Part shown: positions 12,087 through 55,013 of the stretch, piece after piece
Layout of the letters: the number at the start of each line of letters is the position of its first letter
How positions within the stretch are numbered: position 1 is the stretch's first letter
Virus record (IMG/VR): IMGVR_UViG_3300042691_055965
Span: 62,001 to 126,000 of that record
Direction: 5' to 3' (one strand)
DNA: 64,000 nucleotides
Position numbers and translations under genes: made by a program
The notes under the pieces: generated by a model
Databases searched by the model: none
What the model was told of the DNA's origin: nothing
Seen by the model: the letters and a program-made list of their open reading frames with translations, nothing else

Positions 12087-12713
12087 TTAAGAATTTAATC
12101 CTCTAGGTCCACCAAGAACTATCATATTTAGTTGTGTTACATCAGTACCAAAACCGTCAGTCCACACTGGGTTAGGTGGTGTAATTTGATTTATTGTACT
12201 ACCTGTCGCACCACAATCACAACAAATCACACATACGGTTGCTTCTGTATTTGCACTTCTTGGAATATCACTTTCACAATCAGAACAGCTCACAAATGGT
12301 CCGGCTTCAGGAAAATAATTGTTTTCATCAGGTAAATCTTCTTTTCCATCTATAAATGTAGCACAAAAGAATACTTCATTTTCAGAAAATTGGAATACCT
12401 CATCTTTTCTTGGGTTACTACCATAAACTTCACAAAAACCACTTATACTGTATAAAAAAGTTGTCCCGTCACAGTTTTGAAATTCCAAAGATTGTAAAGT
12501 ACCGCCCGTGAAACAATCACAACAATCAGTATAAGGGTGTGAATAAGAATATAACGGTATGGGTTCATCTTCAGTTACAGATATAACTGTACCACAAATT
12601 TCTGATTCTTCGCCAAAGTTAAAACCAATAACTTCAAGAGGTGATAGTGTTGTAGATGCCGATACAATATACTCTAAACCATCTAAACAACCTTCTACAA
12701 TATAATTTGCCAT
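12087..12713 (-). CDS. Cys-rich virion protein (CxxC repeat family)
   Basis: Two CxxC-ending modules plus a C-terminal domain shared with 12745-14760; late motif at 12727-12734. Confidence 0.6.
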   Translation of the reverse strand: MANYIVEGCLDGLEYIVSASTTLSPLEVIGFNFGEESEICGTVISVTEDEPIPLYSYSHPYTDCCDCFTGGTLQSLEFQNCDGTTFLYSISGFCEVYGSNPRKDEVFQFSENEVFFCATFIDGKEDLPDENNYFPEAGPFVSCSDCESDIPRSANTEATVCVICCDCGATGSTINQITPPNPVWTDGFGTDVTQLNMIVLGGPRGLNS

Positions 12714-12744
12714 TTTTTCTTTTTTATATAAATATCATTATGTT

Positions 12745-14760
12745 TTAATTATTCAATCCTCTCGGACCACCAAGTACCACCATATTCATTTGTGTCACAT
12801 CAATGCCATATTGATCGGTATATACTGGATGTGGTGGTGCCACTTGTGTTATTGTACTTCCTGAAGAACCACAATCACAACAAACGACACATATTAAAGT
12901 TTCTGTATTTGCACTTCTTGGAAATCTTGTGTTGTCAAAAGCACATTGGATACAATTATAATATGTCGATACGGGGGTTATAGTTGTGTAATTTGGTTCT
13001 AATGGACAATTATTTAATAAAATATAACATTGTCCATAATTTTGAGTCACAAACACTAATTGTCCGTCTGTATAAGCCATTATATTCCAAATATCAATTG
13101 GGATATTAACAAACTGTTGGTTTCCACCACCACATTTGACAATAGATGCACCAATTAATGTTCCAGTATTACACGTTGCACAATCATCAAAAGGAGTCAA
13201 CGTGTTTGAAATATAAGCAATACCACTTCCACCAACATACGTGTAGGGTGACAATAATTTTTGACACTGAAATTCCGAGGTTCCTCTTAATACCTTTACG
13301 TAATCACCTGTTGTAAATGAATTTGAAGTTAATACAACAATGTTATTGTAACCAGTTCCACACTCTTCAGTTAACCAAATATAATAATTATCGGCATTTG
13401 CTTGACATTCTGTGCAACTTTCAAAAACTTCGAAACTTGATACAGCATAATATGCATCATTAATTTCAATACCTGTGATTTCAACACAATCATTAAGTTG
13501 TGGGACATAAAATATTTTACCTATTGGGTTTTGAACGTATTTATACGAAAAAACAGTACCTGTAGTTGAAATACTTGTTACTTCTATAATAAATGGATTA
13601 ACACCACCAAAAGGAGGTGATGAAATCGATATAGTATCACCAACTTGATATCCAATACCACCAAAAAAACCTATATTCAAAATACTACCACTCTGAACGG
13701 TTACGTCAAAATAAGCACCTACACCATTACCATCTGTTGTGCCTGTCAGATTAAGATATTCTCCATCTAATAATCCTACACCCGTGTCATAAGTTATGTT
13801 TCCAATCGGACCTGTATTAGTACAACTCGAATAAGAATAATATAAACCATTACATTGAATACATTCTTGACAATCAGGTTGTGGATCGAAGTTTAAAAAA
13901 GTATTTATTGTTACTGCCGATTCTGTCAAATCGCCCACTTCAAAACACCCATCGATGGTAGAAAGATTTGATACTTCATTTCCTTCGTAAAACACAGAAC
14001 CCCATACAACTTCGTCTTGTCGGGTTAAACAATTTGTTATAATTCTTTTTTCGTTACTAATTGCTAAACAATCTTCACAAGTAACTTCAAATTTTGTACC
14101 TAAAACAGAAACTAACGTTCCGGATGTTTCGGTGCCTTCTTGAATAACATCAACAATCCCACATTGTATATCACCAAAACTATCAATAAAAGTCACTACA
14201 TAATTGGTATAATCAAAACCAAGAGGAAATGCAATCAAGTAAGTGGTAGTAGGTTCCAAACAAGTATTTACCGAATAAACTGAAAAATTATTGGTTAAAC
14301 ATTCAGTGCAACCCGTATACGAATCACTTATTGATGCCAAAGAATAAATAAAATCACCGTCTCTTGGTGTAACAAAACATTCAATAGTTGCGCACAACGT
14401 TTTAATACTATCTTCTAATGAAAATGACAAATAATATATATCATCAATTGTCGGAAGAGTTGTAAAAGTATTAATGTCAATAAAATAAGTTTCACCTCTT
14501 ACACAATCAACAACACTTACCGCTGTTGTAATGCCGCTCAAACATTCTTCACAAGATGTGTAAGAACCATCAAGTGTTGCATTTACTATTTGTTCAGTAT
14601 CTTTTATTATTAATACAGTATAACAATCCGTAGTATTTGGTTCAGTTAAAAGTGTAAATAAATAGGTATTTCCTGTTGTGATTGCACTAACTCGGTCGTC
14701 AACTATAATATTTATTACCGAATCGCCACAACATTTTTGAACTGTTAAATCTCTTGACAT
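12745..14760 (-). CDS. Cys-rich repeat virion protein (fibre or decoration)
   Basis: About seven ~60-aa modules ending in CxxC, an inserted Gly-rich beta domain (GVGAYFDVTV..GGIGYQVGDTI) and the shared PRSANTE...LGGPRGLN C-terminus. Confidence 0.6.
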   Translation of the reverse strand: MSRDLTVQKCCGDSVINIIVDDRVSAITTGNTYLFTLLTEPNTTDCYTVLIIKDTEQIVNATLDGSYTSCEECLSGITTAVSVVDCVRGETYFIDINTFTTLPTIDDIYYLSFSLEDSIKTLCATIECFVTPRDGDFIYSLASISDSYTGCTECLTNNFSVYSVNTCLEPTTTYLIAFPLGFDYTNYVVTFIDSFGDIQCGIVDVIQEGTETSGTLVSVLGTKFEVTCEDCLAISNEKRIITNCLTRQDEVVWGSVFYEGNEVSNLSTIDGCFEVGDLTESAVTINTFLNFDPQPDCQECIQCNGLYYSYSSCTNTGPIGNITYDTGVGLLDGEYLNLTGTTDGNGVGAYFDVTVQSGSILNIGFFGGIGYQVGDTISISSPPFGGVNPFIIEVTSISTTGTVFSYKYVQNPIGKIFYVPQLNDCVEITGIEINDAYYAVSSFEVFESCTECQANADNYYIWLTEECGTGYNNIVVLTSNSFTTGDYVKVLRGTSEFQCQKLLSPYTYVGGSGIAYISNTLTPFDDCATCNTGTLIGASIVKCGGGNQQFVNIPIDIWNIMAYTDGQLVFVTQNYGQCYILLNNCPLEPNYTTITPVSTYYNCIQCAFDNTRFPRSANTETLICVVCCDCGSSGSTITQVAPPHPVYTDQYGIDVTQMNMVVLGGPRGLNN

Positions 14761-14762
14761 AA

Positions 14763-16247
14763 TTATTTCTTATTTACTATTTCAAATTGTAATTCGCGTT
14801 TATAAGTGTCAATATTTCTATCAGTGTTAACTTTTATATCTATAAAATATTCATTTGGTATTTTATCAGTGGTGTCAAAAATGAAATAATAACCATCTAC
14901 AGTTTGATTAATTCTTGTCCAATCTTGAACTTGAACTTCAGTATTTGCACCTTCCCTAACGTAAACTCTGTAATATGCTTCGACATTAAATAATGGTTGA
15001 CTTGACGTATATGCTTGTTTTATAATCACATTTACTTTTCTAACATCAGTGTTCAATATTTTTTCATTTTGTTTAATTCCAAAAAAATCAAATCCATATA
15101 ATTTCGGAGTTTCAGTAGTTGCACCAATTTTAATGTTTCCATTTTTTTCAAGTAAAACAAACTCATTTTCTTGGTTGGATAAATTTGCTCCATTTAATTT
15201 AAGTCCTTTCCAAATATCATAATACAAACAAGGTGTTGTTGCACCTGTTAAATTACTTACAAGGACTTTATAAACCCCTTTTGTTACAAGACAAGTAGGT
15301 AAATTAATATATCCAGAAACAAAAGAACCGTTCATGTCCTGAATGTCAACCAATGGATTTTGATCTAAATTTACAGGATTTCCATTTTGATAAACAAACA
15401 AATACAAGTTGTTATTATTTCCTGCGTAAAACGTTGTTCTATTGTCGATAATTAAATCATTATAAGAAGTTTCCAAAAATGGTTCGTAAAACGTTTGTGT
15501 GTGTGGTGAAAAGAAACCTACCGAATAGTTTTCAGTAAGTCCCGATATATTTTCAACTTGTGGGTAGAAAGAAATGCCCCAACCTGTAACACCCATTATA
15601 CTCCCATCTAATATACCATTGATTTCATTTGTCATGTCGAATTCAATATCTTCATTTCCGAATTCAAAATGTTGAGTATCAATTATTGTAAGAGCACTAA
15701 AATTAACACCTGTTAGTGATAATTGTGAATTAGTGTTGTCATAAATTCCTGGCAAAGACCAATTAGATATTGTTGTTGTTTGAAACCAATTTACAGGTCT
15801 ATCAGAATAAGATTTGTCGTTATATGGATTTATTTTATAATCGTAATAATCGTACCCAACACCACTGTCCCAACTTTGTGGTGTCCCTGTTTCTCCTGAT
15901 GTTTGTGGAATTCGATAAAGTATTAAATCAAATGAAGTTGCCCTTCTTCTACCTTGTGATGTTTTGTCATTTAACAAATCACTATCAAAAAAAGAAGTGT
16001 TTGTCATTCTTAACGTATGTTTGATGTTATTAAAACCAGTACAATCCGTTGATATTACACCATCACTAAGAAGATTTGTTAGATTTGTCAAATCTAAATC
16101 AAAAATATAACGACTAAAACCAAATGGTATACCTACATTATCCAACCTACCATAAAACAATTCAACAATTGGGTTTCTTGAAGTGTTGGTATATGAATTA
16201 TAAAGTAACGTATCCGACTTATCAAAATAAGATTTATATATAGACAT
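14763..16247 (-). CDS. Putative structural (baseplate-region) protein
   Basis: Late motif at 16260-16267; beta-rich; next to the spike gene. Confidence 0.5.
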   Translation of the reverse strand: MSIYKSYFDKSDTLLYNSYTNTSRNPIVELFYGRLDNVGIPFGFSRYIFDLDLTNLTNLLSDGVISTDCTGFNNIKHTLRMTNTSFFDSDLLNDKTSQGRRRATSFDLILYRIPQTSGETGTPQSWDSGVGYDYYDYKINPYNDKSYSDRPVNWFQTTTISNWSLPGIYDNTNSQLSLTGVNFSALTIIDTQHFEFGNEDIEFDMTNEINGILDGSIMGVTGWGISFYPQVENISGLTENYSVGFFSPHTQTFYEPFLETSYNDLIIDNRTTFYAGNNNNLYLFVYQNGNPVNLDQNPLVDIQDMNGSFVSGYINLPTCLVTKGVYKVLVSNLTGATTPCLYYDIWKGLKLNGANLSNQENEFVLLEKNGNIKIGATTETPKLYGFDFFGIKQNEKILNTDVRKVNVIIKQAYTSSQPLFNVEAYYRVYVREGANTEVQVQDWTRINQTVDGYYFIFDTTDKIPNEYFIDIKVNTDRNIDTYKRELQFEIVNKK

Positions 16248-16268
16248 TTGTTTTTTATATATAAATAC

Positions 16269-17849
16269 TTAATTGATTCGAATATTTTTGTTCAATACTT
16301 TATCGTAGGCTTCTTGTAGTTTAGTTAATACTTGTTGTGTTGATATATTTGACGAAAGTGCAACTGGTGTTGGTGGTAACATCGGGTATGGGTGATCGTG
16401 GGTTAATAAAAATTCAACAATTAATTGTAATAAATCCATTAATTCATCACCCCTAACCATCGGTGATGTACTTGGTTCTAAATTATCAACAATTGCATCA
16501 TAATCGACACCATATATTGTATTTTTTAAATCAACACCAGGTGATTTTCCTTCAATATTTGTTTTATGTGATAAAAAGAAAAGTTGATTTGCACCAACAA
16601 TACCTACAGAATTATCAATTTTTTCTGTTATTTTTTCTGTCACTTTTTCATCAACGGCTTCTAATGGAATGTTTTGATCCAATTTTTTGTTTAAAACTGT
16701 ACCGTATCCTGCAATTTCTTGTGTGGTAGACAATCTAACGGCATCTTGTATTCTTGTTAAATTTCCTAACTTAACCAAATCAATATTTCCGGTAAGTTCT
16801 GTTAAAATCTTTCTGAAATTTAAATCAGGTCTGTAATAAAATGGAAATTGTTGTCCATTTGCTGTTGATGTAATAAGATTTGGAGTATCTTTGAAATTAA
16901 TTATTACGTCATTAATTTCTTTTGCAAATTCTGTTACACCACTTACAGAATTAATTTGTTTTTGATATATCAAATTAGTTTCCCCGGTGTAATTTGTACC
17001 ATAACCAAAAAACCCAACTTGCATTTCACTCGAAAATGGATTATCGGGTACTTCATATATTAAAACTCCACCTGTATAAACATCAAATTGTGTTTCAGGA
17101 TTCAAACAATAATACTCAATTAAATATTTAAATTTTAAATTTTGTTTTGTAAGTCTTCGATATTCTTTTGTTGCACCATTTACTGTTTGTTTATCGAAAT
17201 TAGTCAACTGTATGAATGCCCTGTTATCATTAGCAACAGGAATTTGTCCTCTTTCAAATGGTAAATGTTTTCCTGCACGTAATAAAAGTTCATTATTTTT
17301 AATAATAATATCTGCACTATCCCTACCATTTAATGAAATGTCTGAAGGTTCAACAAAAACCCCTTTATTTTGTGTTGGATTTTTAAATTCTCCATTACCA
17401 TTTTTAATTGGTGGAAAACTTATAGATGAATTTTGTCTACCAAAATCAAGTCTTGTTCTTGCCGATTGAAAATCTTCAAACTTAATTGTCATCGGTGATG
17501 AATAAGGTGCAATCATATAAAACTTGTTTCTACCTGATCTGTTTCGTGCATCAAAATAGAACAACATAACCATTTCGTTTTCTTGTGGGACTTGGTTTAT
17601 GAAGTAAGGTAAATAAGATAAAAATATAAAAGGATCTTTATCTGACCATGGGCCATTTTTTTCAAACGTACCAAACTGATCGAAACCAACTGCAGATTGT
17701 ATTCTTTGTTCGTAGTTATCCGTTGTTGATACTGCCCTAATTCGTCCAAGCATCAACGGATCATTTGCGTCCAAACATCTACCAAAAAAGAAATTTTGCG
17801 TTATATCGAATGGTAAATCCCTTGGGGTTTGTTTTATTTCTTCAGGCAT
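16269..17849 (-). CDS. Baseplate hub/central spike (gp5-like OB-fold N-terminus)
   Basis: FGRC...NDPLMLGRIRA and VPQENEMV N-terminus; beta-helix-like LNGRDSADIIIK; C-terminal HxH (THDHPY). Confidence 0.7.
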   Translation of the reverse strand: MPEEIKQTPRDLPFDITQNFFFGRCLDANDPLMLGRIRAVSTTDNYEQRIQSAVGFDQFGTFEKNGPWSDKDPFIFLSYLPYFINQVPQENEMVMLFYFDARNRSGRNKFYMIAPYSSPMTIKFEDFQSARTRLDFGRQNSSISFPPIKNGNGEFKNPTQNKGVFVEPSDISLNGRDSADIIIKNNELLLRAGKHLPFERGQIPVANDNRAFIQLTNFDKQTVNGATKEYRRLTKQNLKFKYLIEYYCLNPETQFDVYTGGVLIYEVPDNPFSSEMQVGFFGYGTNYTGETNLIYQKQINSVSGVTEFAKEINDVIINFKDTPNLITSTANGQQFPFYYRPDLNFRKILTELTGNIDLVKLGNLTRIQDAVRLSTTQEIAGYGTVLNKKLDQNIPLEAVDEKVTEKITEKIDNSVGIVGANQLFFLSHKTNIEGKSPGVDLKNTIYGVDYDAIVDNLEPSTSPMVRGDELMDLLQLIVEFLLTHDHPYPMLPPTPVALSSNISTQQVLTKLQEAYDKVLNKNIRIN

Positions 17850-18045: not shown

Positions 18046-18047
18046 TA

Positions 18048-20000: not shown

Positions 20001-20002
20001 AA

Positions 20003-20398: not shown

Positions 20399-21145
20399 TT
20401 ATGAATTGTGAATTCTTTTGAGTGTGTCTAAATATAAAGTTTTGTATTTTTTTAAGTAAATTCTAATTTCTTTAGTGTTTAGATTAGTCATTTCTCTTAA
20501 CGATAACAATACAATGTTTTTGTTGAATTTATTATTATCATTACCAATGAAAATATTTCCATAATTGTCAAATAATTCAATAAGTGCGTGACCTAGTTTT
20601 AATTCATTTTCATTTTCTATTTTATTGTGAACGTAAAGTCTTAAGTCACTCAAAAATGTATCTATAACTTTTTCGGCATCAATTTTTTCAAATTCCAAAT
20701 AATAAATCATATCAGGACGATTTTCTAATGTTGATGAAATATCTTCATAAGAAATTTTTCTATTTGTGTCTTTCTGATCTTTTTGGATTTGCCCCATAAG
20801 ATAGTTTTTACAAATAGTACCAAAATAAGAATACGCCTTCTTATTTTTTGCCGGTTTAAATTTATCAATTTTTGTCATTAGAAAAGAATGTGTGTCTGAA
20901 TGATTATCTTCAAAATTCATATCTCTTCTATATAATTTGTATCTTCGGATAATTGACTCTATCATTTTGTTCAATGGTTCCCGAAGACACGTATTATAGA
21001 TAAATTCTTTTTCTTCACGAGAGTTAGATAAAAGGTAATCTTTAACTGCCTGCTCTTCACGAACGTCAAAGTAATTATTTTTTTTTACTTTATTCGTCTT
21101 TTTAAATTCTATACTGGTTGTTTCATTTTCACCTGAAATAAACAT
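20399..21145 (-). CDS. Phage late-transcription sigma factor (gp55-like)
   Basis: KNNYF N-terminus; region 2-like KFKP...KAYSYFGTICKNY, comparable to gp55 F.P..S.NPFAYFTQI. Confidence 0.7.
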   Translation of the reverse strand: MFISGENETTSIEFKKTNKVKKNNYFDVREEQAVKDYLLSNSREEKEFIYNTCLREPLNKMIESIIRRYKLYRRDMNFEDNHSDTHSFLMTKIDKFKPAKNKKAYSYFGTICKNYLMGQIQKDQKDTNRKISYEDISSTLENRPDMIYYLEFEKIDAEKVIDTFLSDLRLYVHNKIENENELKLGHALIELFDNYGNIFIGNDNNKFNKNIVLLSLREMTNLNTKEIRIYLKKYKTLYLDTLKRIHNS

Positions 21146-21954
21146 TAAACTTCTTGTGGTTCGAATTTTATGTTTCTATCGGTAGTGAAAAAGTATTCTT
21201 TTTTTGCCGTTTCTAACCAAAAACTAACTTCAGTGTCTGAAATTCTTTCGTCGCTAAATTTGTAATTCCAAAAAATAGAACCTTCCCTCATGTTCGTATG
21301 TTTATAACCGATTCTTGGAATTGTCATAATTTTTACCGAATTATATGTAAGTCTTAAAAGGAATTCATATACAAATGTAAGTTTAATAGATGGTTTAAAT
21401 CCCCCATTGTCTTCAAACACTGATTTTTTAATTACCATACCACTGGTTTGAAAATTTTGATAATTTAAAAGTAAATCATTTGTAAGATATCCCATTTCTG
21501 TATTAATACTCACTGCAAAAGTTGCTTCGTTTGTAAATCCAGCAAACACACCTTTATCATCAGTATCAACAACTAACGGTAAAAAAGTATCAACTTCAGG
21601 ATATGATTCTTCAAACCGTTTCACATTTTTAAACCAAATTGCAGAGTATTCATCATCAAATTCCAAAACAGACACCCACTTACTTGTAGCATTTTTTACA
21701 CCCAAATTAACTTGTGATGAAAAGTCAGTATCACCAGTATTTTCAATCTTGACAACATTTATGTTTTCAAAGTCAATAGAATCCAACTTATTTTTAAGTG
21801 TTTCGTCTTGTGAATGTACAATGATTAATTCATTAATTTTGACTGTTTGATTTTTAATTGATTGTATACTTCTTTCAAATAGACTATCAAAATCCCTTAC
21901 ATTTGAAGAACTAACTGGTAAAATTACTGATACATTAAATTTATTCATTTCCAT
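21145..21954 (-). CDS. Glycosyltransferase, GT2/GT-A fold
   Basis: VSVILPV, SIKNQT, NLGV....SKWV.VLEFDD. Confidence 0.8.
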   Translation of the reverse strand: MEMNKFNVSVILPVSSSNVRDFDSLFERSIQSIKNQTVKINELIIVHSQDETLKNKLDSIDFENINVVKIENTGDTDFSSQVNLGVKNATSKWVSVLEFDDEYSAIWFKNVKRFEESYPEVDTFLPLVVDTDDKGVFAGFTNEATFAVSINTEMGYLTNDLLLNYQNFQTSGMVIKKSVFEDNGGFKPSIKLTFVYEFLLRLTYNSVKIMTIPRIGYKHTNMREGSIFWNYKFSDERISDTEVSFWLETAKKEYFFTTDRNIKFEPQEV

Positions 21955-24677: not shown

Positions 24678-24690
24678 TATGAAATTTTTC

Positions 24691-25509: not shown

Positions 25510-25521
25510 AATTTTTATTTT

Positions 25522-26897: not shown

Positions 26898-26909
26898 TTT
26901 TTTAAAATT

Positions 26910-27491: not shown

Positions 27492-27531
27492 GTTGTAAAC
27501 ATGATTGTTTTTAATTTTTTGTAAACATTAT

Positions 27532-43849: not shown

Positions 43850-46800
43850 ATGGCGTTAATAACTAGATCGATAGGACCTGATGCACAAGGATCAAAGTTG
43901 AGTTTTGCACAAATGGATAATAACTTATACTTCTTACAGAGTATCGGTTATACAGGTGGAACTTATGAAAATAATACATTGATTTTGACTAACCCTACGG
44001 GTGGTACTATTGAAACTGTAATCGAATCTTTTACAAGAAACTTCATTCCATCAGGGACATCTATAACAATATATGAAGATTATCAAAATTTAATTTTTGG
44101 TGATTTAGTAGTTCAAGGTGAATTAAATATTGAAAATGGTGCCGAACTAGTTGTGTTGAATGGTGCAATAATAGTAAGTGGAGGAACAATAAATAATTCA
44201 GGATTAACTTATTCAATCACATTACCTGAATATAACACTTTCTTAACTAACGCAACACTCGATTCAAATACAAAAAAATTATCATTTACAGGTAATTTTG
44301 GATTCGTACCGTTTGAAACAGATTTATCATCACTGTCTTTTACAGGTGGTAATGTAAATAACTTATCAACAAACTCATTATCGGCAACTTCAATTACTGC
44401 AAATACAATTGATTTATGTGCAACCAATGGAACCCTTTTTACTGATTCAATATCTGGTTGTTCTCCAATTAATATTTTAAGTTTTTCAAATTTTCATGAA
44501 GGATTAAGTGGGTCGACTATTAGTGGTGAAACTTTTTATTTAAACGGAACAAATATTCAAAATTTATTAGGGGGTGAGTTTTTACCTTTGAGTGGTGGCA
44601 CAGTTACAGGTAACACTATTTTCACTCAAGGAGTTACCGCAAATACTGTTAATAGTTTAAAATTAGGTATTGGTGCTGGAAACATCAATTCAAATATTTC
44701 TATTGGAATTTCTTCACTTCAAAGCAACTCAACTGGTTGTAAAAATATCGCAATTGGAGGTATTTCATTGTATAATAATAATAGTGGTAATTTCAACGTT
44801 GCGATAGGTGATGAATCTATGGTTCAAAACACAACGGGTGGTAGAAATGTTGCTCTTGGTAGAAACACTTTAAGAAATAATGGTTGTGGATACGATAACG
44901 TCGCTATAGGATATAGGGCGTTATATTCGAACACCGATGGAAATACAAATGTGGCGATAGGAAAAAATAATTTATGTTCAAACACAACAGGAAACAACAA
45001 CGTATCATTGGGACAATGTTCTTTATTATCCAATACATCAGGTTATAACAACATTTCATTGGGTAACCAATCTCTTCAATCTAACACTTCCGGTAATAAT
45101 AACATATCACTTGGTACTCAATCACTTGTGAACAATACAACAGGTAGTCGTAATGTGTCTTTAGGATTTTTAGCACTCCAAAACAACACAGGAGGAACGG
45201 GTAATATTGGAATTGGTGAAAGAAGTTTATTAAATAATACACAAGGAAATTATAATGTTGCTGTTGGTAGATTCGCTTTATGTTCAAACACAACAGGAAT
45301 AAATAATTTGGCACTTGGAACTGGTTCTTTATCTAAAAACACAACAGGACAAAACAACGTTGGTTTGGGTACATTATCATTGTATAATAACACAACAGGA
45401 TGTCAAAACGTGTCATTGGGAATATTTTCATTGTATAAAAATACAACCGGTAATAACAACGTGTCGTTGGGTGGAAACTCTATACGATTCAACACTACTG
45501 GTAGTAATAATGTATCATTAGGGTATCAAACACTATTTTGTAACACATCAGGAAGTAACAATGTATCGTTGGGTGCAAATTCACTTTATTCAAATACAAC
45601 AGGAGGTAATAACATATCATTAGGTCAAAGTTCACTCCAATCTAACACAACAGGAGGTAATAACGTATCGTTGGGTACAAGTTCACTTCGATGTAACACC
45701 ACGGGATTTCAAAACGTTGCGTTGGGTAGATTTTCTTTACAATATAACACAACAGGAAATAACAACATAGGTATTGGTTATGCATCATTATGTTGTAATT
45801 TATCAAATGGTAATGTTGGTATTGGTTGGAATACTTTATCTAGAAATACAACGGGAAGTAAGAATTTAGCGGTTGGGTATCAAGCATTGTTTGGTAATAC
45901 TACTGGTGGTTATAATATCGCATTTGGTGATCAAACATTAAGAAATAACACAACGGGAACCCAAAATTTTGGAGTTGGACAGGGTGCTTTACGTAGTAAC
46001 ACAACAGGATTTAGTAACCTTGCAATGGGAAGAACTTCTTTATGTACAAATTCTACAGGATGTTACAATATTGCTATAGGTGATGCTGCCATGTTAGGTA
46101 ATACAACGGGTAGTAATAATGTATCTTTAGGAAAATCATCACTTCGATCAAACACAACCGGTCCGGGTAATGTTGTCATCGGGGCGAATACTTTACAATC
46201 TAACACAACGGGAGGAAGTAATGTTGCTGTTGGATTTTACGCTTTAAGGTGTAATACAACTGCAAGTTTTAATATAGGAATCGGATCACAGGCTTTGTAT
46301 CGTAATACTACGGGTACACCTAATATTGCGATAGGGACAAACGCCCTTCGATGTAACACTACTGGTGGTAATCATATTGCTATAGGTTGTAATGCTCTTT
46401 TGAATAATACAACTTCATATAATAACGTGTCGTTAGGTGTATGTTCATTATTAGCAAACACAACTGGGTCCGGTAATTTTGCGGTAGGGAACACATCCAT
46501 GCGTTGTAATACAATTGGATGTTATAACATTGCATTGGGTACATCTAGTTTATTTAATAACTCAATTGGGAATTTTAATGTTGGTATTGGTAGATTACCT
46601 CTCTTTTCCAACACTACCGGTTCTAACAATGTGGCATTAGGATATAATCCTCTACGGTTCAACACAACCGGATCTAACAACGTATCGTTGGGTACAAGTT
46701 CACTCCAATCTAACACAACGGGCGGTAACAACATATCATTAGGATATAGATCGTTATTGTTGAATACAACCGGAGTTAACAACGTATCTTTGGGTGGAAG

Positions 46801-48220: not shown

Positions 48221-48258
48221 TTTTCTTTACACTTATTTTCTTTTATAAACTTAATTCA

Positions 48259-49080
48259 ATGGTACAAAAGATTTTTTTTAATACTTCACTCCCAAGAGCG
48301 GGTTCAACATTAATACAAAATATATTAATGCAAAATCCTGATATATATTCAACTCCTACATCAGGAATAATAGAATTATTATCAACCGCCAGAACAATTT
48401 ACACAAATAACGACGCTTTCAAGGCTCAAGATCCCGAAACCATGAAATTAGGATTCAAAAACTTTTGTTTAAAAGGTTTATATGGTTTTTATAATGGAGT
48501 AACTGACAGACCTTATGTAATAGAAAAAAGTAGAGGATGGCTCGGGTATCAAGATTTTGTAGAATTTTTTATGGGAGAAAAACCAAAAATGATTTGTATG
48601 GTTCGTGATTTAAGAGGAATATTTGCATCTATGGAAAAAAACTTCAGAAAAAATCCTGACAAAGATGCTAATATTATTAACACTATTGAGTTAAAAAACA
48701 TGACAACTACGTCTAGAATCGATCATTTTTCGGTTGCACCTCCAATCGGGCCTTCATTAGAATGGTTATCAGAAACTTTTCAAAGAGGACAAAACAATGA
48801 TATTTTATTTATACGTTTTGAAGATTTGACAACTGACCCCGAAACTGAAGTCAAAAAAATTTATAATTATTTAAAACTCCCACACTTCAATCACGATTTC
48901 AACAATGTTCAACAATTGACACATGAAAATGATGTTATTCACGGTATTTTTGGAGATCACAAAATTAAACCTAAAGTAGAACCAATTAAAAATGATTATG
49001 TCGAAATTTTAGGACAAGAAAATTGTGATAGATTGAAACAACATTATGATTGGTATTTTAGAATATTTAACTATATATAA
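48259..49080 (+). CDS. PAPS-dependent sulfotransferase
   Basis: 5'-PSB loop SLPRAGSTL; EKSR.W; 3'-PB VRD....AS; IRFEDL..DP. Confidence 0.88.
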   Translation: MVQKIFFNTSLPRAGSTLIQNILMQNPDIYSTPTSGIIELLSTARTIYTNNDAFKAQDPETMKLGFKNFCLKGLYGFYNGVTDRPYVIEKSRGWLGYQDFVEFFMGEKPKMICMVRDLRGIFASMEKNFRKNPDKDANIINTIELKNMTTTSRIDHFSVAPPIGPSLEWLSETFQRGQNNDILFIRFEDLTTDPETEVKKIYNYLKLPHFNHDFNNVQQLTHENDVIHGIFGDHKIKPKVEPIKNDYVEILGQENCDRLKQHYDWYFRIFNYI

Positions 49081-49107
49081 TAAAATAAAACATAAAAAAA
49101 TAAAAAA

Positions 49108-49350: not shown

Positions 49351-49372
49351 TTTAACTTCTTACATTTTTCTT

Positions 49373-50251: not shown

Positions 50252-50353
50252 AATATTTTTCTTTTTTTATTTACTTTTTTAACTGATTTTAAATTAATTT
50301 TCTTTCCCATCAACAATTACGTATAAAATAGATATTTATAGTAAAAAGAAAAA

Positions 50354-53300
50354 ATGGGAAAATTAATTTTAAGAAATAACGGTTTTGAAACTCAATTTAT
50401 AAATGGACTATCTTTTTCGGGGTTGTCCGCTCAAACTAACACCTATTTTTTAGGATTCGATCCGTTCACTAATAATTTAGAAGGATTAGATCCGAGTGGT
50501 AATACAATAAATTTTGAAGGCGGTGGTACAACATTTACAGGAGGTACAGTAAGTGGTGAAACATTCTTTCCTTCAGGTTTAACTGCATCAACTATTTCCG
50601 CAACAACATATCAAAATTTACCTTGTAATTCTGAATCTGTAACCTATTCTGAATTAGTTGATAATATAACGGGTGGGACTCTTTGTGAAGGAAAATATTA
50701 TTTAATAACAGATTACCAAACTTGTTACGATCAACCTGATTTTGATTATAATGGTAGCCCTATAACAACAGGTAATTACAAACAAGGTCCTGTTGAACCT
50801 ATTTTAGTTTTAGCAACAAGTGCAAACACAATCAGTGAGATTGCTTATCAACCATCTTACCCTAAAGATAGAATATTATATGACTGGACTTGGAATACAA
50901 CTGAGGTTACTGGTGGAGTTGCTTTTGGTAGAATCACTGAAAGAATTGATGAGTTTAATAACAGAACTGATTATGACCACAGAAATGTTTTATTTAAAAG
51001 ATATAAATTATATACTATTAGACCTGGACAACAATTAAATGGTTCAATAGAACTACAATCCGATGGTACTGTACTTGGTACAAATACATACTTTACGGGT
51101 TTAACTGTTGGTGATATAATTTATATGGATGGAAATTCTTTGTTCTACGAAATTACAGGAATTACCGATAATACTACTATGAATGTTTCGGGTGATACTA
51201 TATCATCGTTTGGATGTTGTTCATCTTTCTATAAGGCAATAGAAGAAACAAACGGAACGGGATACTTCAGTTTCAAACAAACAAATGTATATAGTGATGA
51301 TTTTGCTGAATACACAACTTTTGGTGATGCACTTTCAAACAGTTATGCAAAAAATAATTACATAGGAAATTATGCAAACAACTATCAAAATGCAGGTTCA
51401 GGAACTTTCTTATTATCTAACAATGTATTTTTAGAAGGTCAATACGAAAGTAATAAATTTGGTGATTATTGTTATAATAATACTTTTGGTACTGATAACC
51501 AAAACAACGTTTGGGGGGACTATTGTTATGAAAACGTATCAACAAATGATATTGATGATAATTTCATCGGTCATTATTTTTATAGAAATTTATTAAATGT
51601 CAATCTAATAAACAATCAGATTGGTAACTATTTTTATAATAATCAATTATTAGCGGAAAATAATGATTCTTTTGATAGTAACATTATTGGTAATAATTTC
51701 AATAACAATACCATTTACTCTTGGTTTTATAAAAATGAAATATTAGACGAATTTAATAATAATACTATCGGAGACTTTGGTAACTTGACTGACTTCGAAT
51801 TTTATAGGAATTATATCAGAAATAACTTCAATAATAATACTATACGACAAACATTCCAAAATAATCAAATAGGTACAAACTATCAAAATAACACAATTAA
51901 TGGAGAATTTGTTGGTAATACAATATTAAATGGATTTAATAATAACACAGTAGGTGCATATTTCAATCTTAACGAAATTGGAAACGGATTTAATCAAAAC
52001 GTAGTAAACGACAGTTTTTATCAAAATTCAACAAAATATTATTTTCGTAGTAATCGAGTGAGTAACTCCTTTTTTTCTAACAATATTGGTGAGTACTTCG
52101 AAAGTAATAAACCGTCCAATTTCACTCTTTCAAGTTGGTTTGATTTGAGTACTGTAACATCAAGAACTTTTGACGTTTTCAATCAAGTTGTAGGTGGAGG
52201 ACAAATAGGACGTAAAGTATTAGGCAAAGAACTTGTTATGCAAGTTGTACCAACTTCACAATATTTTAAAATTAAAATTACCCAATGGACACAAAACGGT
52301 AATGGTGGTGGGTTTCAGTGGGAAAGAACTGAAATAGATTCATCAGGAAATAATATCGGTCCAACAATTTATTTTACTAAAACAAATAATGGTTCTGAAG
52401 TGGATGTGATAGTCCCTGGGGTTGTTGAAATCACTAGAAGTAATCAAAATGGTATCTATAACACTGTTACAGAAGTATCTTGGAATGGAGGTATATCACC
52501 AAGTGGGACAACATGGAATTCAATATATACACAACCAAATAACGGTGAAAGATTTGCATATAACAAAATTGGTAACAATTTTTACAACAACATAATTGGA
52601 AACGATTTTGGTTTTGGTGGTGGTACACCTTATGGTAATGTAATTTTAGATCGTTTTGAGTTCAACGAAGTTGGGGCGTTTATGTACAATAATAACATAG
52701 GTAATTATTATACAAATAATTTAGTTGGTGATTATTTTGAAAACAACACAATTAAAAATTATTTTATAGGAAACACAATTGGTGATGGATTTGAAAGTAA
52801 TACAATTGGTGACTATTTTGGACAAAATGGAGGTAACATTCAAAACACAATTATTAATGATTTCAAATTTAACAAGATAGGAAATTATTTTGGTAACGAT
52901 GGAACAAATACTGACGGAGGAAATGTAATCAATAACGGTTTTCAAAACAATACAATCGGGGATAATTTTTACTTCAACGCATGTGATGAAAATTTTTCTA
53001 ACAACGTAATAGGTAATTCATTTATTTTTAATACTATCCTGACTGGATTTTCAGACAACCAAATCGGCAACGTTTATGTTACAAACGATTTAGGTAATAA
53101 TTTTTCAAGTAACAAAATCGGAAATTATTTTGCATTTTCAACTATTGGAAATAGTTTTCAAAAAAATGTGGTAGGTGATTTTTTTGGAAATGCAAATGGC
53201 GATAACCAAATTGGTGATGATTTTACAAACAATCAAATTGGAAATAATTTTGGTAATGATGGTACAAACAATTTCGGAGGAAATACCGTTGGTAGTGGAT

Positions 53301-53473
53301 TTACTAAAAATATAATTACATCGACACAAGTATATGGTTATGACTTTACTATGTCTACTTATGTATATGATAGTAACATGAACAAAAACATTTTCGATAG
53401 ACAAGACGGAACACCAAGATTATCATATTATGATAATTCAGATGTATTAAATATAACAAATATAGATAATTAA
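50354..53473 (+). CDS. Tail spike/fibre with an Asn-rich beta-helix
   Basis: GKYYLITDYQT, G.I..R.D..NN..DYD.RN..F.R, ~10-aa FxNNxIGxx repeats; late motif at 50333-50340. Confidence 0.72.
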   Translation: MGKLILRNNGFETQFINGLSFSGLSAQTNTYFLGFDPFTNNLEGLDPSGNTINFEGGGTTFTGGTVSGETFFPSGLTASTISATTYQNLPCNSESVTYSELVDNITGGTLCEGKYYLITDYQTCYDQPDFDYNGSPITTGNYKQGPVEPILVLATSANTISEIAYQPSYPKDRILYDWTWNTTEVTGGVAFGRITERIDEFNNRTDYDHRNVLFKRYKLYTIRPGQQLNGSIELQSDGTVLGTNTYFTGLTVGDIIYMDGNSLFYEITGITDNTTMNVSGDTISSFGCCSSFYKAIEETNGTGYFSFKQTNVYSDDFAEYTTFGDALSNSYAKNNYIGNYANNYQNAGSGTFLLSNNVFLEGQYESNKFGDYCYNNTFGTDNQNNVWGDYCYENVSTNDIDDNFIGHYFYRNLLNVNLINNQIGNYFYNNQLLAENNDSFDSNIIGNNFNNNTIYSWFYKNEILDEFNNNTIGDFGNLTDFEFYRNYIRNNFNNNTIRQTFQNNQIGTNYQNNTINGEFVGNTILNGFNNNTVGAYFNLNEIGNGFNQNVVNDSFYQNSTKYYFRSNRVSNSFFSNNIGEYFESNKPSNFTLSSWFDLSTVTSRTFDVFNQVVGGGQIGRKVLGKELVMQVVPTSQYFKIKITQWTQNGNGGGFQWERTEIDSSGNNIGPTIYFTKTNNGSEVDVIVPGVVEITRSNQNGIYNTVTEVSWNGGISPSGTTWNSIYTQPNNGERFAYNKIGNNFYNNIIGNDFGFGGGTPYGNVILDRFEFNEVGAFMYNNNIGNYYTNNLVGDYFENNTIKNYFIGNTIGDGFESNTIGDYFGQNGGNIQNTIINDFKFNKIGNYFGNDGTNTDGGNVINNGFQNNTIGDNFYFNACDENFSNNVIGNSFIFNTILTGFSDNQIGNVYVTNDLGNNFSSNKIGNYFAFSTIGNSFQKNVVGDFFGNANGDNQIGDDFTNNQIGNNFGNDGTNNFGGNTVGSGFTKNIITSTQVYGYDFTMSTYVYDSNMNKNIFDRQDGTPRLSYYDNSDVLNITNIDN

Positions 53474-53475
53474 TT

Positions 53476-54042
53476 ATGGCAAATTTTATAGTACAAAATT
53501 GTATAAATCCTAGTGAAACTTATGTTGTTGCGGAACAAAAAGAAACTTTTAACATTGGAGGGGTTATTTTAGTTGCCGGAAATGGTTTTGACTTGGGGTG
53601 TTTTTCTATTATTGAACAAACAGACTTACAACCAACCGCTTTCGAAGGAAGTCAAGTATTTCCCGATTGCATAGAATGTTTTGGTGTTTTCAACCCTTCA
53701 TTTTCTTTTACAGAATGTGAATTTCCAGAAAACATTTACAAAATAAATTCTACTAATTTTTTAACTTTACCTACAATTAATAAAGTTTATCAAATGTTAA
53801 TTGATGAAGATGTTGAACCAAAATGTTACGAATTTACAGAACAAAATTTTAATAATCCTGGAAGTTCTACTTTTTCAGGTATACCTGAAGAATTCAATAC
53901 TTGTGAAGAATGTAGTCCTTCACCTTTTGATTTGGCTTTAGAAGAAAGAAATAACAATGCGGGGTTTCAACAAAAACAACAACTTCTTAGAGATAACTAT
54001 AATGAATATATAAACAATAGAACTATAAATGTTCCTAAATAA
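53476..54042 (+). CDS. Cys-rich CxxC-module protein (paralogue of 12087-12713)
   Basis: MANFIVQNC versus MANYIVEGC; DCIEC and TCEEC modules. Confidence 0.6.
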   Translation: MANFIVQNCINPSETYVVAEQKETFNIGGVILVAGNGFDLGCFSIIEQTDLQPTAFEGSQVFPDCIECFGVFNPSFSFTECEFPENIYKINSTNFLTLPTINKVYQMLIDEDVEPKCYEFTEQNFNNPGSSTFSGIPEEFNTCEECSPSPFDLALEERNNNAGFQQKQQLLRDNYNEYINNRTINVPK

Positions 54043-54053
54043 AATTAAAAAAA

Positions 54054-55013
54054 ATGGCAACAAAATATATAGTAGATAACGTATCGGGACAAACAATAAC
54101 AGGTGATATTACCATAAATGGTAATTTGAGTGTGACTGGTAGTACAACAAGTGGTGTAGCAACTTACAAGGCACTTTTAACTCAAACTGCTCCAATATCA
54201 GGTTTTAATTTAAACACATTTAACCTTTCGTTAATTGTTGGTGAAACTTACACAATAAATACATACAATAACGGTGACGATTTTTCAAATGTTGCTGATG
54301 TCCAAAGTGGAACAATAAATCAAGCTGGTTGTGTTTTTATTGCAACGGGGTGTTGTCCAAACGATTGGTCTAGTAATTCTGAATTAATATCTTCAGGGAA
54401 TTTAGTAGTCGACGTTATAGAAAATAGTTTAGGTTATGATCTCGAATGGAGTATGTTTTTTATACCAGGATTTTATATAGCATATCCTCAAAATATTGGA
54501 CCGAAATATAACGGTTTTCCAAGGAGAAAGGTTTCAGTTGCAACTCAACAAACATTAATTGGGTTGGCGTTAGATTTGGATTATGTAAAATATTATTCCC
54601 AACCAACTTCATTTAACTCTTTAGATGATATTATTATTTTTCAGGCTTGGAACTCAGACACCCAACTTTCTGTTGATGATACTTTATTTTACACTCCCAT
54701 TGAAATAAATATTAAACAAGATTTGGATACAACCCCTTTAACAATTAATGGTTCTGTCACAGTTCCTTATTCATTTAGTTATCCAAGTATACAATTGAAT
54801 TGTAACGGAAATTATGTTGATGTTTTTGTTGGTGATAATATCACAGTCAATGATTTACCAGAATTGGTAAATGTTTTAAATAGTAATATTCAAACAAGTT
54901 TCTTGGGGACATATTCTGAAGACGGTACTGACATTTATTTGACAATACCAACAAATCTTAAAAATAGATTCTGTTCAAGTGGAACATTAACTTTTGAGGT
55001 ATACAGCGATTAA
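54054..55013 (+). CDS. Putative tail-associated structural protein
   Basis: ITGDITINGNLSVTG; YKALLTQT; G.TYTI....DDFSN module. Confidence 0.55.
   Translation: MATKYIVDNVSGQTITGDITINGNLSVTGSTTSGVATYKALLTQTAPISGFNLNTFNLSLIVGETYTINTYNNGDDFSNVADVQSGTINQAGCVFIATGCCPNDWSSNSELISSGNLVVDVIENSLGYDLEWSMFFIPGFYIAYPQNIGPKYNGFPRRKVSVATQQTLIGLALDLDYVKYYSQPTSFNSLDDIIIFQAWNSDTQLSVDDTLFYTPIEINIKQDLDTTPLTINGSVTVPYSFSYPSIQLNCNGNYVDVFVGDNITVNDLPELVNVLNSNIQTSFLGTYSEDGTDIYLTIPTNLKNRFCSSGTLTFEVYSD

What the first reader, a model, noticed from the sequence alone, without database searches (positions are those of the whole stretch)
12087..55013. Candidate virion-wide glycosylation sequon [S/T]-[G/A]-x-[T/S] paired with a phage glycosylation toolkit
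By manual count the motif occurs about 13 times in 41871-43820 (TGLT, TGQT, TGYT, SGLT, SATT...), about 13 times in the first 270 aa of 43850-48220, about 14 times in 50354-53473, about 9 times in 12745-14760, 4 times each in 12087-12713 and 14763-16247, and also in the spike, the 54054 protein and the MCP insertion. It occurs only about twice in the 966-aa polymerase and about twice in the helicase. These proteins are mostly non-homologous, so convergent accumulation of one short motif points to a modification site. The window encodes about 11 glycosyltransferase genes, sugar-synthesis enzymes, two methyltransferases and a sulfotransferase. Inference: a cytoplasmic, sequon-directed O-glycosylation system coats the whole virion, analogous to giant-virus fibril glycosylation and distinct from the host periplasmic D(S/T)x system.
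Basis: partly seen in the sequence, partly recalled or inferred. Interest (0 to 1): 0.88.

Follow-up and report, generated by a model that had tools for sequence, protein, structure and literature searches.

The report
Candidate glycosylation motif on phage tails
A four-residue motif (Ser/Thr-Gly/Ala-x-Thr) is strongly over-represented in the tail, baseplate and fibre proteins of a 229-kb aquatic jumbo phage and hundreds of relatives; it vanishes from the same proteins in a related phage that lacks one conserved sugar-transferase gene at its usual position, so it is a good but unproven candidate for the first defined attachment motif for phage-made protein glycosylation.

Summary
The motif is really phi-[S/T]-[G/A]-x-T-phi. 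Seven proteins hold 55 copies against 8.7 +/- 2.9 in 20-residue local shuffles. The reversed motif is flat. SA.T, SG.T and TG.T are the top three of 8000 gapped patterns.

The sugar toolkit is confirmed: nine soluble GT genes, sugar-nucleotide enzymes, two methyltransferases and a sulfotransferase, with no membrane export machinery.

New evidence comes from relatives. The excess holds across the 41871 family down to 29% identity. It is a genome-level trait: unrelated neighbouring structural proteins gain or lose it together. A motif-free sister clade with the same GC and gene order lacks GT 38040, GT 35083 and the sugar island at the syntenic slot. Its orthologues keep the turn glycine but replace both hydroxyl positions. 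No locus pairs this GT with a motif-poor protein.

Only one independent contrast is informative, only about 33 kb of the motif-free genome was read, and no chemistry exists. Verdict: sequon-directed cytoplasmic O-glycosylation of the tail apparatus is the best explanation (about 0.5), not proven.

The parts
41871..43820 (+). 649-aa LamG/ConA-like jelly-roll protein, probably a peripheral baseplate or fibre-anchor protein. It is the most motif-rich protein, with 14 [ST][GA]x[TS] and 12 [ST][GA]xT.
   Evidence: z 9.6. The family has >1365 homologues and 713 representatives at the 50% level; all 50 aligned members show the excess. AF2 model pLDDT 84.7, with 11 of 14 motifs in coil next to strands. 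Only weak jelly-roll fold matches.
43850..44689 (+). N-terminal 280 aa of the 1456-aa repeat fibre or spike protein (full ORF 43850-48220). Motif-dense segment.
   Evidence: 13 against 2.5, z 7.1; the rest of the protein is depleted. PHROG tail spike / virion structural protein, E down to 7e-229.
50354..53473 (+). 1039-aa fibre-like protein with N-terminal motif runs and a long NNxIGNxF beta-helix-like repeat.
   Evidence: 16 against 3.5, z 7; survives local shuffles. Partial similarity to annotated tail fibre proteins.
12745..14760 (-). 671-aa Cys-rich protein in the block between the capsid gene and the tape-measure-like gene; motif-rich.
   Evidence: 9 against 2.9; [ST][GA]xT 8 against 1.8. 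The positional analogue in the motif-free phage has 0.
12087..12713 (-). 208-aa paralogue of the C-terminal domain of 12745; motif-rich.
   Evidence: 4 against 0.74; 40% identity over 150 aa to 12745.
14763..16247 (-). 494-aa protein, probably tail or baseplate; moderately motif-rich.
   Evidence: 4 against 1.1; all four have T at position 4. The orthologue in the motif-free phage (E 2e-66) has 0.
16269..17849 (-). 526-aa protein next to the tape-measure-like gene; weakly motif-rich.
   Evidence: 3 against 0.72. The orthologue in the motif-free phage has 0.
38040..39254 (-). 404-aa GT4-type GT-B glycosyltransferase. It is a core, syntenic gene of the lineage and the best candidate for the motif-linked transferase.
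   Evidence: PHROG 7162 glycosyltransferase, 7e-47. Syntenic in nearly all loci whose flank reaches the slot. Absent from the slot in the motif-free clade. AF2 pLDDT 88.3; the top fold hits are GT4 enzymes GlgM, MshA, BshA and PglA.
35083..36720 (-). 545-aa two-domain glycosyltransferase (GT2_5 plus GT4), near-core. Likely elongating or a second transferase.
   Evidence: Pfam 9.5e-30 and 1e-11. Present in most motif-rich loci. Absent from motif-rich L147 and from the motif-free clade.
24691..35083 (-). Variable sugar island: RmlD-like (24691), 3,5-epimerase-like (25522), SDR epimerase/dehydratase (25938), methyltransferase (26910), GT4 (27532), FkbM methyltransferase (28446), GT4 (29072), GT2 (30097), double GT2 (30903), GT32-like (32417), GT2 (33213), UDP-GlcNAc 2-epimerase (34019).
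   Evidence: Pfam. No membrane proteins. Content varies between related loci. The whole island is missing at this position in the motif-free phage.
21145..21954 (-). 269-aa GT2-like protein. With 21964-23022 (no family hit) it is retained in the motif-free phage, so it is not sufficient for the motif.
   Evidence: Pfam GT2 6e-07. Orthologues in L258, E 7e-39 and 4e-74.
48259..49080 (+). 273-aa sulfotransferase embedded between the two fibre genes; a possible glycan-decorating enzyme.
   Evidence: Pfam Sulfotransfer_3 4.6e-14. Homologues recur in the fibre modules of related loci.

Best explanation
The window is part of a 229-kb T4-like jumbo phage of a Bacteroidota (probably Flavobacteriia) host. 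In seven of its tail, baseplate and fibre proteins, the tetrapeptide [S/T]-[G/A]-x-T is maintained by selection at about six times the chance frequency. It usually has a hydrophobic residue on each side and sits at a loop-to-strand junction.

The most likely reason is that the motif is the acceptor site (sequon) of a phage-encoded, cytoplasmic protein O-glycosylation pathway. In this model a soluble GT4-type transferase (38040) puts the first sugar on a motif hydroxyl of folded or folding tail proteins. The near-core two-domain GT 35083 and a variable island of soluble GTs extend the glycan. Those GTs are fed by phage sugar-nucleotide enzymes, and the glycan is decorated by methyl- and sulfotransferases. 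The glycans would coat the host-facing parts of the virion.

Shown: the enrichment, its direction, its conservation and turnover across a huge family, its genome-level co-occurrence in unrelated proteins, its concerted absence in a clade that lacks 38040, 35083 and the island at the syntenic slot, and the soluble nature of the GTs.

Inferred: that sugar is attached at all, that 38040 is the initiating enzyme, which hydroxyl is the acceptor, and what the glycan does.
For: (1) Enrichment is robust and directional, and it emerges from an unbiased scan.

(2) It spans at least five unrelated protein families in one genome. Enzymes show 6 against 4.9 expected.

(3) All 50 aligned members of the 41871 family, down to 29% identity, have z 3.4-15. 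Some sites are conserved with class-preserving swaps (TGQT/SGET, SAVT/TGVT), and many others turn over. So density as well as position is selected.

(4) It is a genome-level trait. Unrelated neighbours of motif-rich homologues are at 2.70x (3682/1366). Neighbours of motif-poor homologues are at 1.17x (37/31.7), including the independent lineage L159.

(5) The motif-free clade (L150-153, L160, L258, L259) has the same GC (29.5%) and gene order. Its orthologues of 41871, 14763 and 16269, the capsid protein and the Cys-rich analogue of 12745 all carry 0 motifs. The slot lacks 38040, 35083 and the island, and about 33 kb there have no GT Pfam hit.

(6) At the best-conserved site, V[S/T]GxT becomes V[D/N/R/Q]GN[N/Q]. 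The Gly is kept and both hydroxyls are replaced by other polar residues, so the hydroxyls are exposed and not needed for the fold.

(7) Among 235 loci, none has the GT together with a motif-poor homologue.

(8) Motif-rich L147 has 38040 nearby but not 35083, the dUTPase or the exonuclease.

(9) Negative controls show no directional excess: the tail module of coliphage ESCO13 and the structural proteins of Flavobacterium phage immuto.

(10) No transmembrane or export proteins are encoded in the sugar cluster.

(11) Related large Flavobacteriia phages are reported to have four core GT families of unknown target (PMC12619734).
Against: - There is no chemical evidence that any of these proteins is glycosylated.
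- The motif-GT link rests on one phylogenetically independent contrast; the independent-pairs test has no power.
- Only about 33 kb of the 246-349 kb motif-free genome was read, so a GT elsewhere is not excluded.
- 35 motif-rich loci show no 38040-type GT within 10 kb. One of them has it 15 kb away; the rest are unknown.
- The GT4 fold of 38040 says nothing about its acceptor, and the gene lies next to nucleotide-metabolism genes.
- phi92-like coliphages have 26-28% identical GTs without any motif excess.
- Enzymes of the window show no avoidance of the motif.
- That the seven proteins are virion components is inferred from position and weak similarity, except for 43850.
Confidence: 0.5

Rival explanations
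1. The motif marks a different trans-acting system: another Ser/Thr modification, an assembly chaperone or fibre-attachment recognition site, or a host enzyme. On this view the GT cluster works on something else, such as phage DNA, a host surface polysaccharide or a small molecule. The absence of 38040 from the motif-free clade would then be a coincidence of one lineage.
For: - The genome-level behaviour requires a trans factor but does not identify it.
- Only one independent contrast links the motif to 38040.
- 38040 sits between a dUTPase and a 3'-5' exonuclease.
- Its GT4 fold is acceptor-neutral.
- Distant 38040 relatives in phi92-like phages occur without the motif.
- The literature lists DNA glycosylation and serotype conversion as common roles of phage GTs.
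Against: - No kinase or other Ser/Thr-modifying enzyme, and no DNA hydroxymethylation enzyme, was found in the window.
- 36717 is an ordinary dUTPase scoring above the curated cut-off.
- No phage DNA glucosyltransferase appears among the top 50 fold matches.
- There is no membrane machinery for exporting a polysaccharide.
- No locus has the GT together with a motif-poor homologue.
- A motif defined by two hydroxyl residues fits an O-linked modification.
Confidence: 0.22
2. The motif is a purely structural element, a favoured tight turn or strand-start unit of these beta-rich tail proteins akin to known short fibre repeats. Nothing is attached to it.
For: - There are hydrophobic residues at -1 (62%) and +4 (56%), against a 33% background.
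- Gly dominates position 2, and a beta-branched Thr is preferred at position 4.
- 11 of 14 sites lie at coil-strand junctions of a confident model.
- Runs such as LSGGTVTGNT in fibre N-termini look like a repeat.
- The Gly is kept even in the motif-free clade.
Against: - Orthologues with the same fold do without both hydroxyls and use D, N, Q or R instead.
- The motif appears in at least five unrelated folds of one genome and disappears from all of them together.
- Many sites turn over between homologues while density is kept.
- Tail, baseplate and fibre proteins of ESCO13 and immuto show no directional excess.
- No Pfam fibre-repeat family matched.
Confidence: 0.18
3. The pattern is phylogenetic inertia plus amino-acid composition. 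On this view a Ser/Thr/Gly-rich ancestor left the motif in descendants, and a composition shift erased it in one clade. No selection on the motif itself is involved.
For: - Motif-poor homologues have an amino-acid make-up unlike the rest of the alignment, and lower expected counts (0.2-0.4 against 1-2).
- Counts across orthologues are not independent.
Against: - Expected values already account for composition, and 20-residue local shuffles keep z at 6-7.
- The reversed motif, with identical composition, is flat in all 50 family members.
- GC is the same in both clades.
- New sites arise at non-homologous positions in distant members.
- The motif-free clade should still show about 12 motifs at the family's enrichment but shows 1.
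Confidence: 0.05

Closest known systems
Mycobacteriophage virion O-glycosylation (Freeman et al. 2023, cited in PMC12619734)
   Same: Phage-encoded glycosyltransferases act in the cytoplasm on the phage's own structural proteins, and the glycans end up on the virion surface.
   Different: In that system the glycans sit on C-terminal extensions of the capsid and tail-tube subunits, and no short consensus motif is described. Here the capsid protein is not enriched. The candidate sites are a defined tetrapeptide scattered through tail, baseplate and fibre proteins. The host phylum and the GT set also differ. Nothing has been shown chemically here.
General O-glycosylation of Bacteroidota, sequon D(S/T)(A/I/L/V/M/T) (from established knowledge)
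   Same: Same host phylum, and a short Ser/Thr-containing sequon that marks many unrelated proteins.
   Different: That system transfers a lipid-linked glycan in the periplasm to exported proteins. The motif here has no Asp requirement, the proteins have no signal peptides, the GTs are soluble with no flippase, and the phage's own secreted proteins show no excess of either motif.
Cytoplasmic heptosylation of autotransporter adhesins by BAHT enzymes (AAH, TibC) (from established knowledge)
   Same: A soluble cytoplasmic transferase modifies many Ser residues in beta-rich, repeat-containing surface proteins. Recognition is described as a strand / short loop / strand unit, which matches the phi-[S/T]-G-x-T-phi context.
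   Different: A different enzyme family: none of the window's GTs matched a heptosyltransferase family. The substrates are bacterial adhesins rather than virion proteins, and no fixed tetrapeptide is involved.
Giant-virus glycosylation (Mimivirus fibrils; chlorovirus capsid protein with atypical N-sequons) (PMC9614988, which I listed but did not read in detail)
   Same: A virus-encoded cluster of GTs and sugar-nucleotide enzymes builds glycans on virion surface proteins independently of host machinery. Chloroviruses use non-canonical short sequons.
   Different: Those are eukaryotic viruses with different enzymes and N-linked or undefined sites. Here the virus is a tailed phage, the candidate sites are O-linked, and they lie on the tail rather than the capsid or fibrils.
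'Moraphages', large aquatic phages of Flavobacteriia (PMC12619734)
   Same: Large genomes, predicted Flavobacteriia hosts, and glycosyltransferases in the core genome. DnaJ genes appear next to the 41871 homologue in some related loci.
   Different: That paper leaves the GT targets open and reports no acceptor motif. Whether this window's phage belongs to that lineage was not tested.

Membership tests
Sequon-directed protein O-glycosylation (generic definition) | A short motif containing a hydroxyl residue is over-represented in the substrate proteins relative to composition. | tested here: met
   55 against 8.7 in seven proteins; directional; top three of 8000 patterns.
Sequon-directed protein O-glycosylation (generic definition) | A dedicated transferase co-occurs with the motif across genomes. 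| tested here: inconclusive
   186 loci are motif-rich with the GT, 8 are motif-poor without it, and 0 are motif-poor with it. The GT is absent from the syntenic slot in the motif-free clade. But there is only one independent contrast, and only about 33 kb of that genome was read.
Sequon-directed protein O-glycosylation (generic definition) | Motif hydroxyls are solvent-exposed on the folded substrate. | tested here: inconclusive
   11 of 14 sites are in coil, and they are replaced by D, N, Q or R in the motif-free clade. No coordinates were available to compute accessibility.
Sequon-directed protein O-glycosylation (generic definition) | A glycan is covalently attached to the motif Ser/Thr. 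| not testable with these tools
   This needs mass spectrometry of virions or of a co-expressed substrate.
Bacteroidota general (periplasmic) O-glycosylation | Sequon D(S/T)(A/I/L/V/M/T) on exported proteins, with lipid-linked glycan and flippase. | tested here: not met
   The residue before the motif is hydrophobic in 62% of instances. There are no N-terminal hydrophobic segments in the motif-rich proteins and no multi-pass membrane proteins in the cluster. There is no D[ST][AILVMT] excess.
Mycobacteriophage-type virion glycosylation | Glycans on C-terminal extensions of the major capsid and tail-tube subunits. | tested here: not met
   The capsid protein has 3 [ST][GA]xT against 1.3 expected and no C-terminal cluster. 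The motifs are spread through tail and fibre proteins.
Phage tail fibre repeat families in Pfam (e.g. Phage_fiber_2) | A match to the family profile. | tested here: not met
   No Pfam family at E <= 0.01 for any of the seven motif-rich proteins. The resemblance to the 'SGGTMTG' repeat is from my memory only.
Phage DNA glycosylation (T4-type alpha/beta-glucosyltransferases and hypermodification pathways) | A DNA glucosyltransferase fold or family, together with a base hydroxymethylation pathway. | tested here: inconclusive
   No such Pfam family among the window's GTs, and none in the top 50 fold matches of 38040. 36717 is a plain dUTPase. The other 165 kb of the genome was not examined.
GT4 retaining GT-B glycosyltransferases (for 38040) | Two Rossmann-like domains with structural similarity to GT4 enzymes. 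| tested here: met
   AF2 pLDDT 88.3. Foldseek E 1e-13 to 1e-10 to GlgM, MshA, BshA, PglA and PimA. Weak Pfam Glyco_trans_1_4. PHROG glycosyltransferase 7e-47.

The most novel reading that the evidence does not exclude
A large, globally distributed lineage of aquatic Bacteroidota jumbo phages runs its own cytoplasmic, sequon-directed protein O-glycosylation system. A conserved GT4 enzyme recognises [S/T]-G-x-T at exposed loop-strand junctions and seeds glycans on the tail, baseplate and fibres, and a fast-evolving island of GTs then diversifies them. This would be the first defined sequon for a virus-encoded O-glycosyltransferase in prokaryotic viruses. It would give these phages a variable glycan coat on the host-recognition apparatus.
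Probability: 0.45. Interest if true: 0.88.

Novelty: new variant of a known kind. Interest (0 to 1): 0.74.

Why it matters
Phage-encoded glycosyltransferase clusters are common in large environmental phages, but their targets are almost never known. The only demonstrated case of phage virion glycosylation (mycobacteriophages) has no defined acceptor motif.

A simple sequence rule that predicts which proteins and which residues are modified would make the question testable from sequence alone across thousands of metagenomic phages. It would name a specific enzyme-substrate pair (38040 with a motif-bearing fragment of 41871) for expression in laboratory E. coli.

It would also suggest that the host-recognition machinery of these phages carries a variable glycan layer. 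That bears on adsorption, on resistance to host or environmental proteases, and on phage-host arms races in aquatic Bacteroidota. A soluble, short-sequon O-glycosyltransferase would be a useful glyco-engineering tool.

Tried and rejected
- Megablast of 19 kb and tblastn of 41871 against cultured phages gave no match, so no annotated close relative exists.
- Pfam and PHROGs gave nothing for six of the seven motif-rich proteins.
- Sequence searches of the fibre N-termini against PDB gave only noise.
- The fold search of the 41871 model gave only weak generic lectin-like jelly-roll matches, so its virion role stays inferred.
- I looked for avoidance of the motif in enzymes. Pooled orthologue counts suggested depletion, but within the window enzymes show 6 against 4.9. 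I rejected the apparent depletion as an artefact of phylogenetic non-independence.
- The independent-pairs test on the tree found one informative pair, so it has no power.
- I tried to read the GT state of the two other motif-free lineages (L159/P0241 and L161/P0148) by context look-ups, viral-contig scans, a second homologue search and exact look-up of a flanking protein. All ended on short contigs.
It did show that one 'GT-negative' motif-rich locus has the GT 15 kb away.
- phi92-type coliphages, the only cultured phages with 38040-like GTs, show no motif excess. The 26%-identical GTs are therefore not informative.
- The DNA-repeat explanation was rejected on codon diversity.
- The GC-content explanation was rejected: 29.5% against about 30%.

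Full report
WHAT THE WINDOW IS. The 64-kb window is part of a 229-kb viral contig (IMGVR_UViG_3300042691_055965). GC is about 30%. The major capsid protein is T4-like, matching Pfam Gp23 at 4e-74. The host signature is Bacteroidota: three phage proteins carry SprB repeats, and two of them also have type IX secretion sorting domains. No cultured phage is close. The nearest by capsid protein are Flavobacterium phage immuto, Microcystis phage Mel-JY01 and huge uncultured phages, at 41-46% identity.

CHECKING THE OBSERVATION.
- It survives whole-protein shuffles and shuffles within 40- and 20-residue blocks. 41871 has 14 against 1.7-2.8 (z 7-10), and 50354 has 16 against 3.6-4.1 (z 6.4-6.7).
- It is directional. 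The reversed motif and four other arrangements of the same residue classes are flat.
- The signal sits in [ST][GA]xT. Ser at position 4 adds nothing.
- Hydrophobic residues flank it, at -1 in 62% and at +4 in 56% of instances, against a 33% background.
- Pooled over the seven proteins, 55 copies stand against 8.7 +/- 2.9 in local shuffles, and the maximum of 2000 shuffles is 22.
- In an unbiased scan of all 8000 'ab.c' patterns, SA.T, SG.T and TG.T rank first, second and third. The motif was therefore not cherry-picked.
- It is encoded by 27 different hexanucleotides, so it is a peptide-level signal.
- Only 12087 and 12745 share a domain.

What fails is the breadth of the claim. The capsid protein, the 54054 protein and ORF 8554 are not enriched. 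The other structural-region proteins together give 9 against 11.2, and the 34 enzymes give 6 against 4.9. The excess belongs to seven proteins of the tail, baseplate and fibre modules, not to the whole virion.

THE SUGAR TOOLKIT. Pfam and PHROGs confirm nine GT genes, two of them two-domain. They also confirm RmlD-like, 3,5-epimerase-like and SDR enzymes, a UDP-GlcNAc 2-epimerase, two methyltransferases and a sulfotransferase. None of these proteins, nor any neighbour, is a multi-pass membrane protein. There is no flippase, polymerase or initiating phosphoglycosyl transferase. That argues for a cytoplasmic acceptor.

THE 41871 FAMILY. The most motif-rich protein belongs to a very large family with no annotation. 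It has more than 1365 homologues and 713 representatives at the 50% level. Many members carry variable C-terminal extensions.
- Every one of 50 aligned members, down to 29% identity, shows the excess (z 3.4-15), while the reversed motif stays flat.
- Some sites are conserved with class-preserving swaps (TGQT/SGET/SGQT, SAVT/TGVT/TAIT).
- Distant members hold many sites at other positions, so density as well as position is maintained.
- At the eight best-conserved sites the consensus is [T/S]-G-[Y/L/V]-T. Position 1 swaps T and S freely (178:136), and position 4 strongly prefers T (270:38).
- A confident AlphaFold model (pLDDT 84.7) puts 11 of the 14 sites in coil next to strands.
- Fold searches give only weak lectin-like jelly-roll matches.

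LINK TO A GLYCOSYLTRANSFERASE. In 80 close loci and 76 loci of a distant subfamily, a homologue of 38040 sits a few kb upstream of the 41871 homologue wherever the flank reaches that far. A homologue of 35083 usually does too. 38040 matches a PHROG glycosyltransferase at 7e-47. It models as a GT-B fold whose nearest structures are GT4 enzymes.

One clade differs (L150-L153, L160). Its 41871 homologues have 0-1 motifs, and a sensitive family HMM finds no 38040 relative there. An exact-sequence look-up placed this clade on 246-kb and 349-kb scaffolds.
- GC is 29.5%, the same as the window.
- Gene order is conserved: 20399, 21145, 21964, 23306, dUTPase, 39970, 40663 and 41871 homologues.
- 38040, the exonuclease 37321, 35083 and the whole 13-kb sugar island are missing from the slot.
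- No GT Pfam hit is recorded in the roughly 33 kb read.
- The orthologues of 41871, 14763 (E 2e-66) and 16269, the capsid protein (E 1e-189) and the Cys-rich positional analogue of 12745 all carry zero motifs.
- Conversely, motif-rich L147 has 38040 nearby without 35083, the dUTPase or the exonuclease.

A GENOME-LEVEL TRAIT. Across all loci, unrelated large neighbours of motif-rich homologues are at 2.70 times expectation (3682/1366). Neighbours of motif-poor homologues are at 1.17 (37/31.7), and enzyme-like neighbours are at 0.73. The motif-poor set includes the independent lineage L159. Unrelated proteins gaining and losing the same tetrapeptide together is what a trans-acting factor predicts, and it is hard to explain by fold.

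At the best-conserved site, V-[S/T]-G-x-T in all motif-rich members becomes VDGNN, VNGNN, VRGNQ or VQGNQ in the motif-free clade. The glycine stays, and both hydroxyls are replaced by other polar residues. The hydroxyls therefore seem exposed and dispensable for folding. No locus among 235 combines the GT with a motif-poor homologue.

CONTROLS.
- The complete tail, baseplate and fibre module of coliphage ESCO13 shows no excess.
- The structural proteins of Flavobacterium phage immuto show forward and reversed counts of equal size, i.e. only composition.
- So the motif is not a general property of phage tail proteins, nor of phages of this host phylum.
- ESCO13 and phi92 do carry 26-28% identical relatives of 38040 and a dTDP-rhamnose pathway. 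A distant GT relative therefore does not predict the motif.

LIMITS. The tree of 135 homologues shows three motif-poor lineages, but the GT state is known for only one, so the independent-pairs test has no power. The other two lineages sit on contigs too short to reach the slot, despite several attempts. Thirty-five motif-rich loci show no GT within 10 kb. In one of them it lies 15 kb away, and the rest are unknown. The GT4 fold does not reveal the acceptor. 38040 lies next to an ordinary dUTPase and an exonuclease, so a role on DNA or another substrate is not excluded. No chemistry exists.

COMPARISON WITH WHAT IS KNOWN. The literature search found no phage sequon. The only documented phage virion glycosylation is in mycobacteriophages, on C-terminal extensions of the capsid and tail-tube subunits (cited in PMC12619734). 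That same paper reports four core GT families of unknown target in large aquatic Flavobacteriia phages. The host's own D(S/T)x periplasmic system does not fit. In mechanism, the closest analogy is the cytoplasmic modification of beta-rich bacterial adhesins at strand-loop-strand units, but the enzyme family differs.

VERDICT. The 'virion-wide' claim is not supported. The sequon interpretation is the best available explanation at about 0.5, ahead of 'another trans factor' (0.22), 'purely structural' (0.18) and 'inertia' (0.05). If true, it would be a new variant of a known kind, phage-encoded virion glycosylation, with a defined motif and a named candidate enzyme, and it can be tested directly in laboratory E. 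coli.

Noticed in passing
window 3628-10545 (+): Five consecutive ORFs (3628, 5811, 6661, 7405, 8554) begin with signal-peptide-like N-termini. 3628 is a subtilase (Peptidase_S8) with a SprB repeat and a type IX secretion sorting domain, 5811 has SprB repeats plus the sorting domain, and 6661 has SprB repeats. So the phage appears to encode cargo for the host's type IX secretion system, directly after its capsid gene.
   Followed up: partly
window 12087-12713 and 12745-14760 (-); L259 5925-7937: 12087 and the C-terminus of 12745 share a Cys-rich domain containing CCDCG (40% identity over 150 aa). A 670-aa protein with 22 cysteines occupies the same position in the motif-free phage. This could be a metal-binding or disulfide-rich tail component.
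   Followed up: partly
window 44690-48220 (+) (residues 281-1456 of the 43850 protein): A long array of repeats of about 15 residues of the NTTGxxN.A.G type. The forward motif is depleted here (4 against 12.8) and the reversed motif is enriched (15 against 5.8), the opposite of the N-terminal 280 residues of the same protein.
   Followed up: partly
L242 (phi92 24524-27785) and phi92/ESCO13 GT genes: phi92-like coliphages carry two full-length relatives of 38040 (26-28% identity) and a complete dTDP-rhamnose pathway, yet their tail proteins show no motif excess. What these GTs modify appears to be unknown.
   Followed up: partly
L149 8857-9915 and L157 8788-9891: A full DnaJ chaperone gene lies directly upstream of the 41871 homologue in two deep-branching relatives. 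Phage-encoded DnaK/DnaJ is the hallmark reported for 'moraphages' (PMC12619734).
   Followed up: no
window 48259-49080 (+); L020, L060, L065, L078, L107, L122, L148: A sulfotransferase gene sits between the two fibre genes, and homologues recur within the fibre modules of related phages. This suggests sulfation of the fibres or of their glycans.
   Followed up: no
window 18048-20000 (-): A 650-aa protein with hydrophobic segments at residues 412-445 and 552-571 lies between the tail and baseplate genes and the sugar cluster. Its position and its orthologue in L258 (688 aa) suggest a tape-measure-like protein.
   Followed up: no
window 1614-3425 (+): The T4-like capsid protein is 603 aa, and its match to the 376-position Gp23 profile falls in two stretches.
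   Followed up: partly
L153 11821-13899, L160 7395-9206, L258 1-246: The first fibre gene downstream of the motif-free 41871 homologues carries a Fib_succ_major (PF09603) domain, and its N-terminus is unlike the window's motif-dense fibre N-termini.
   Followed up: no
window 39970-40371 (-) and 23940-24677 (-): A WYL-domain protein (a possible regulator) lies between 38040 and 41871 and is syntenic across the lineage. A PhoH-like ATPase sits at the edge of the sugar island and overlaps the TTG-start ORF 23306-23983.
   Followed up: no
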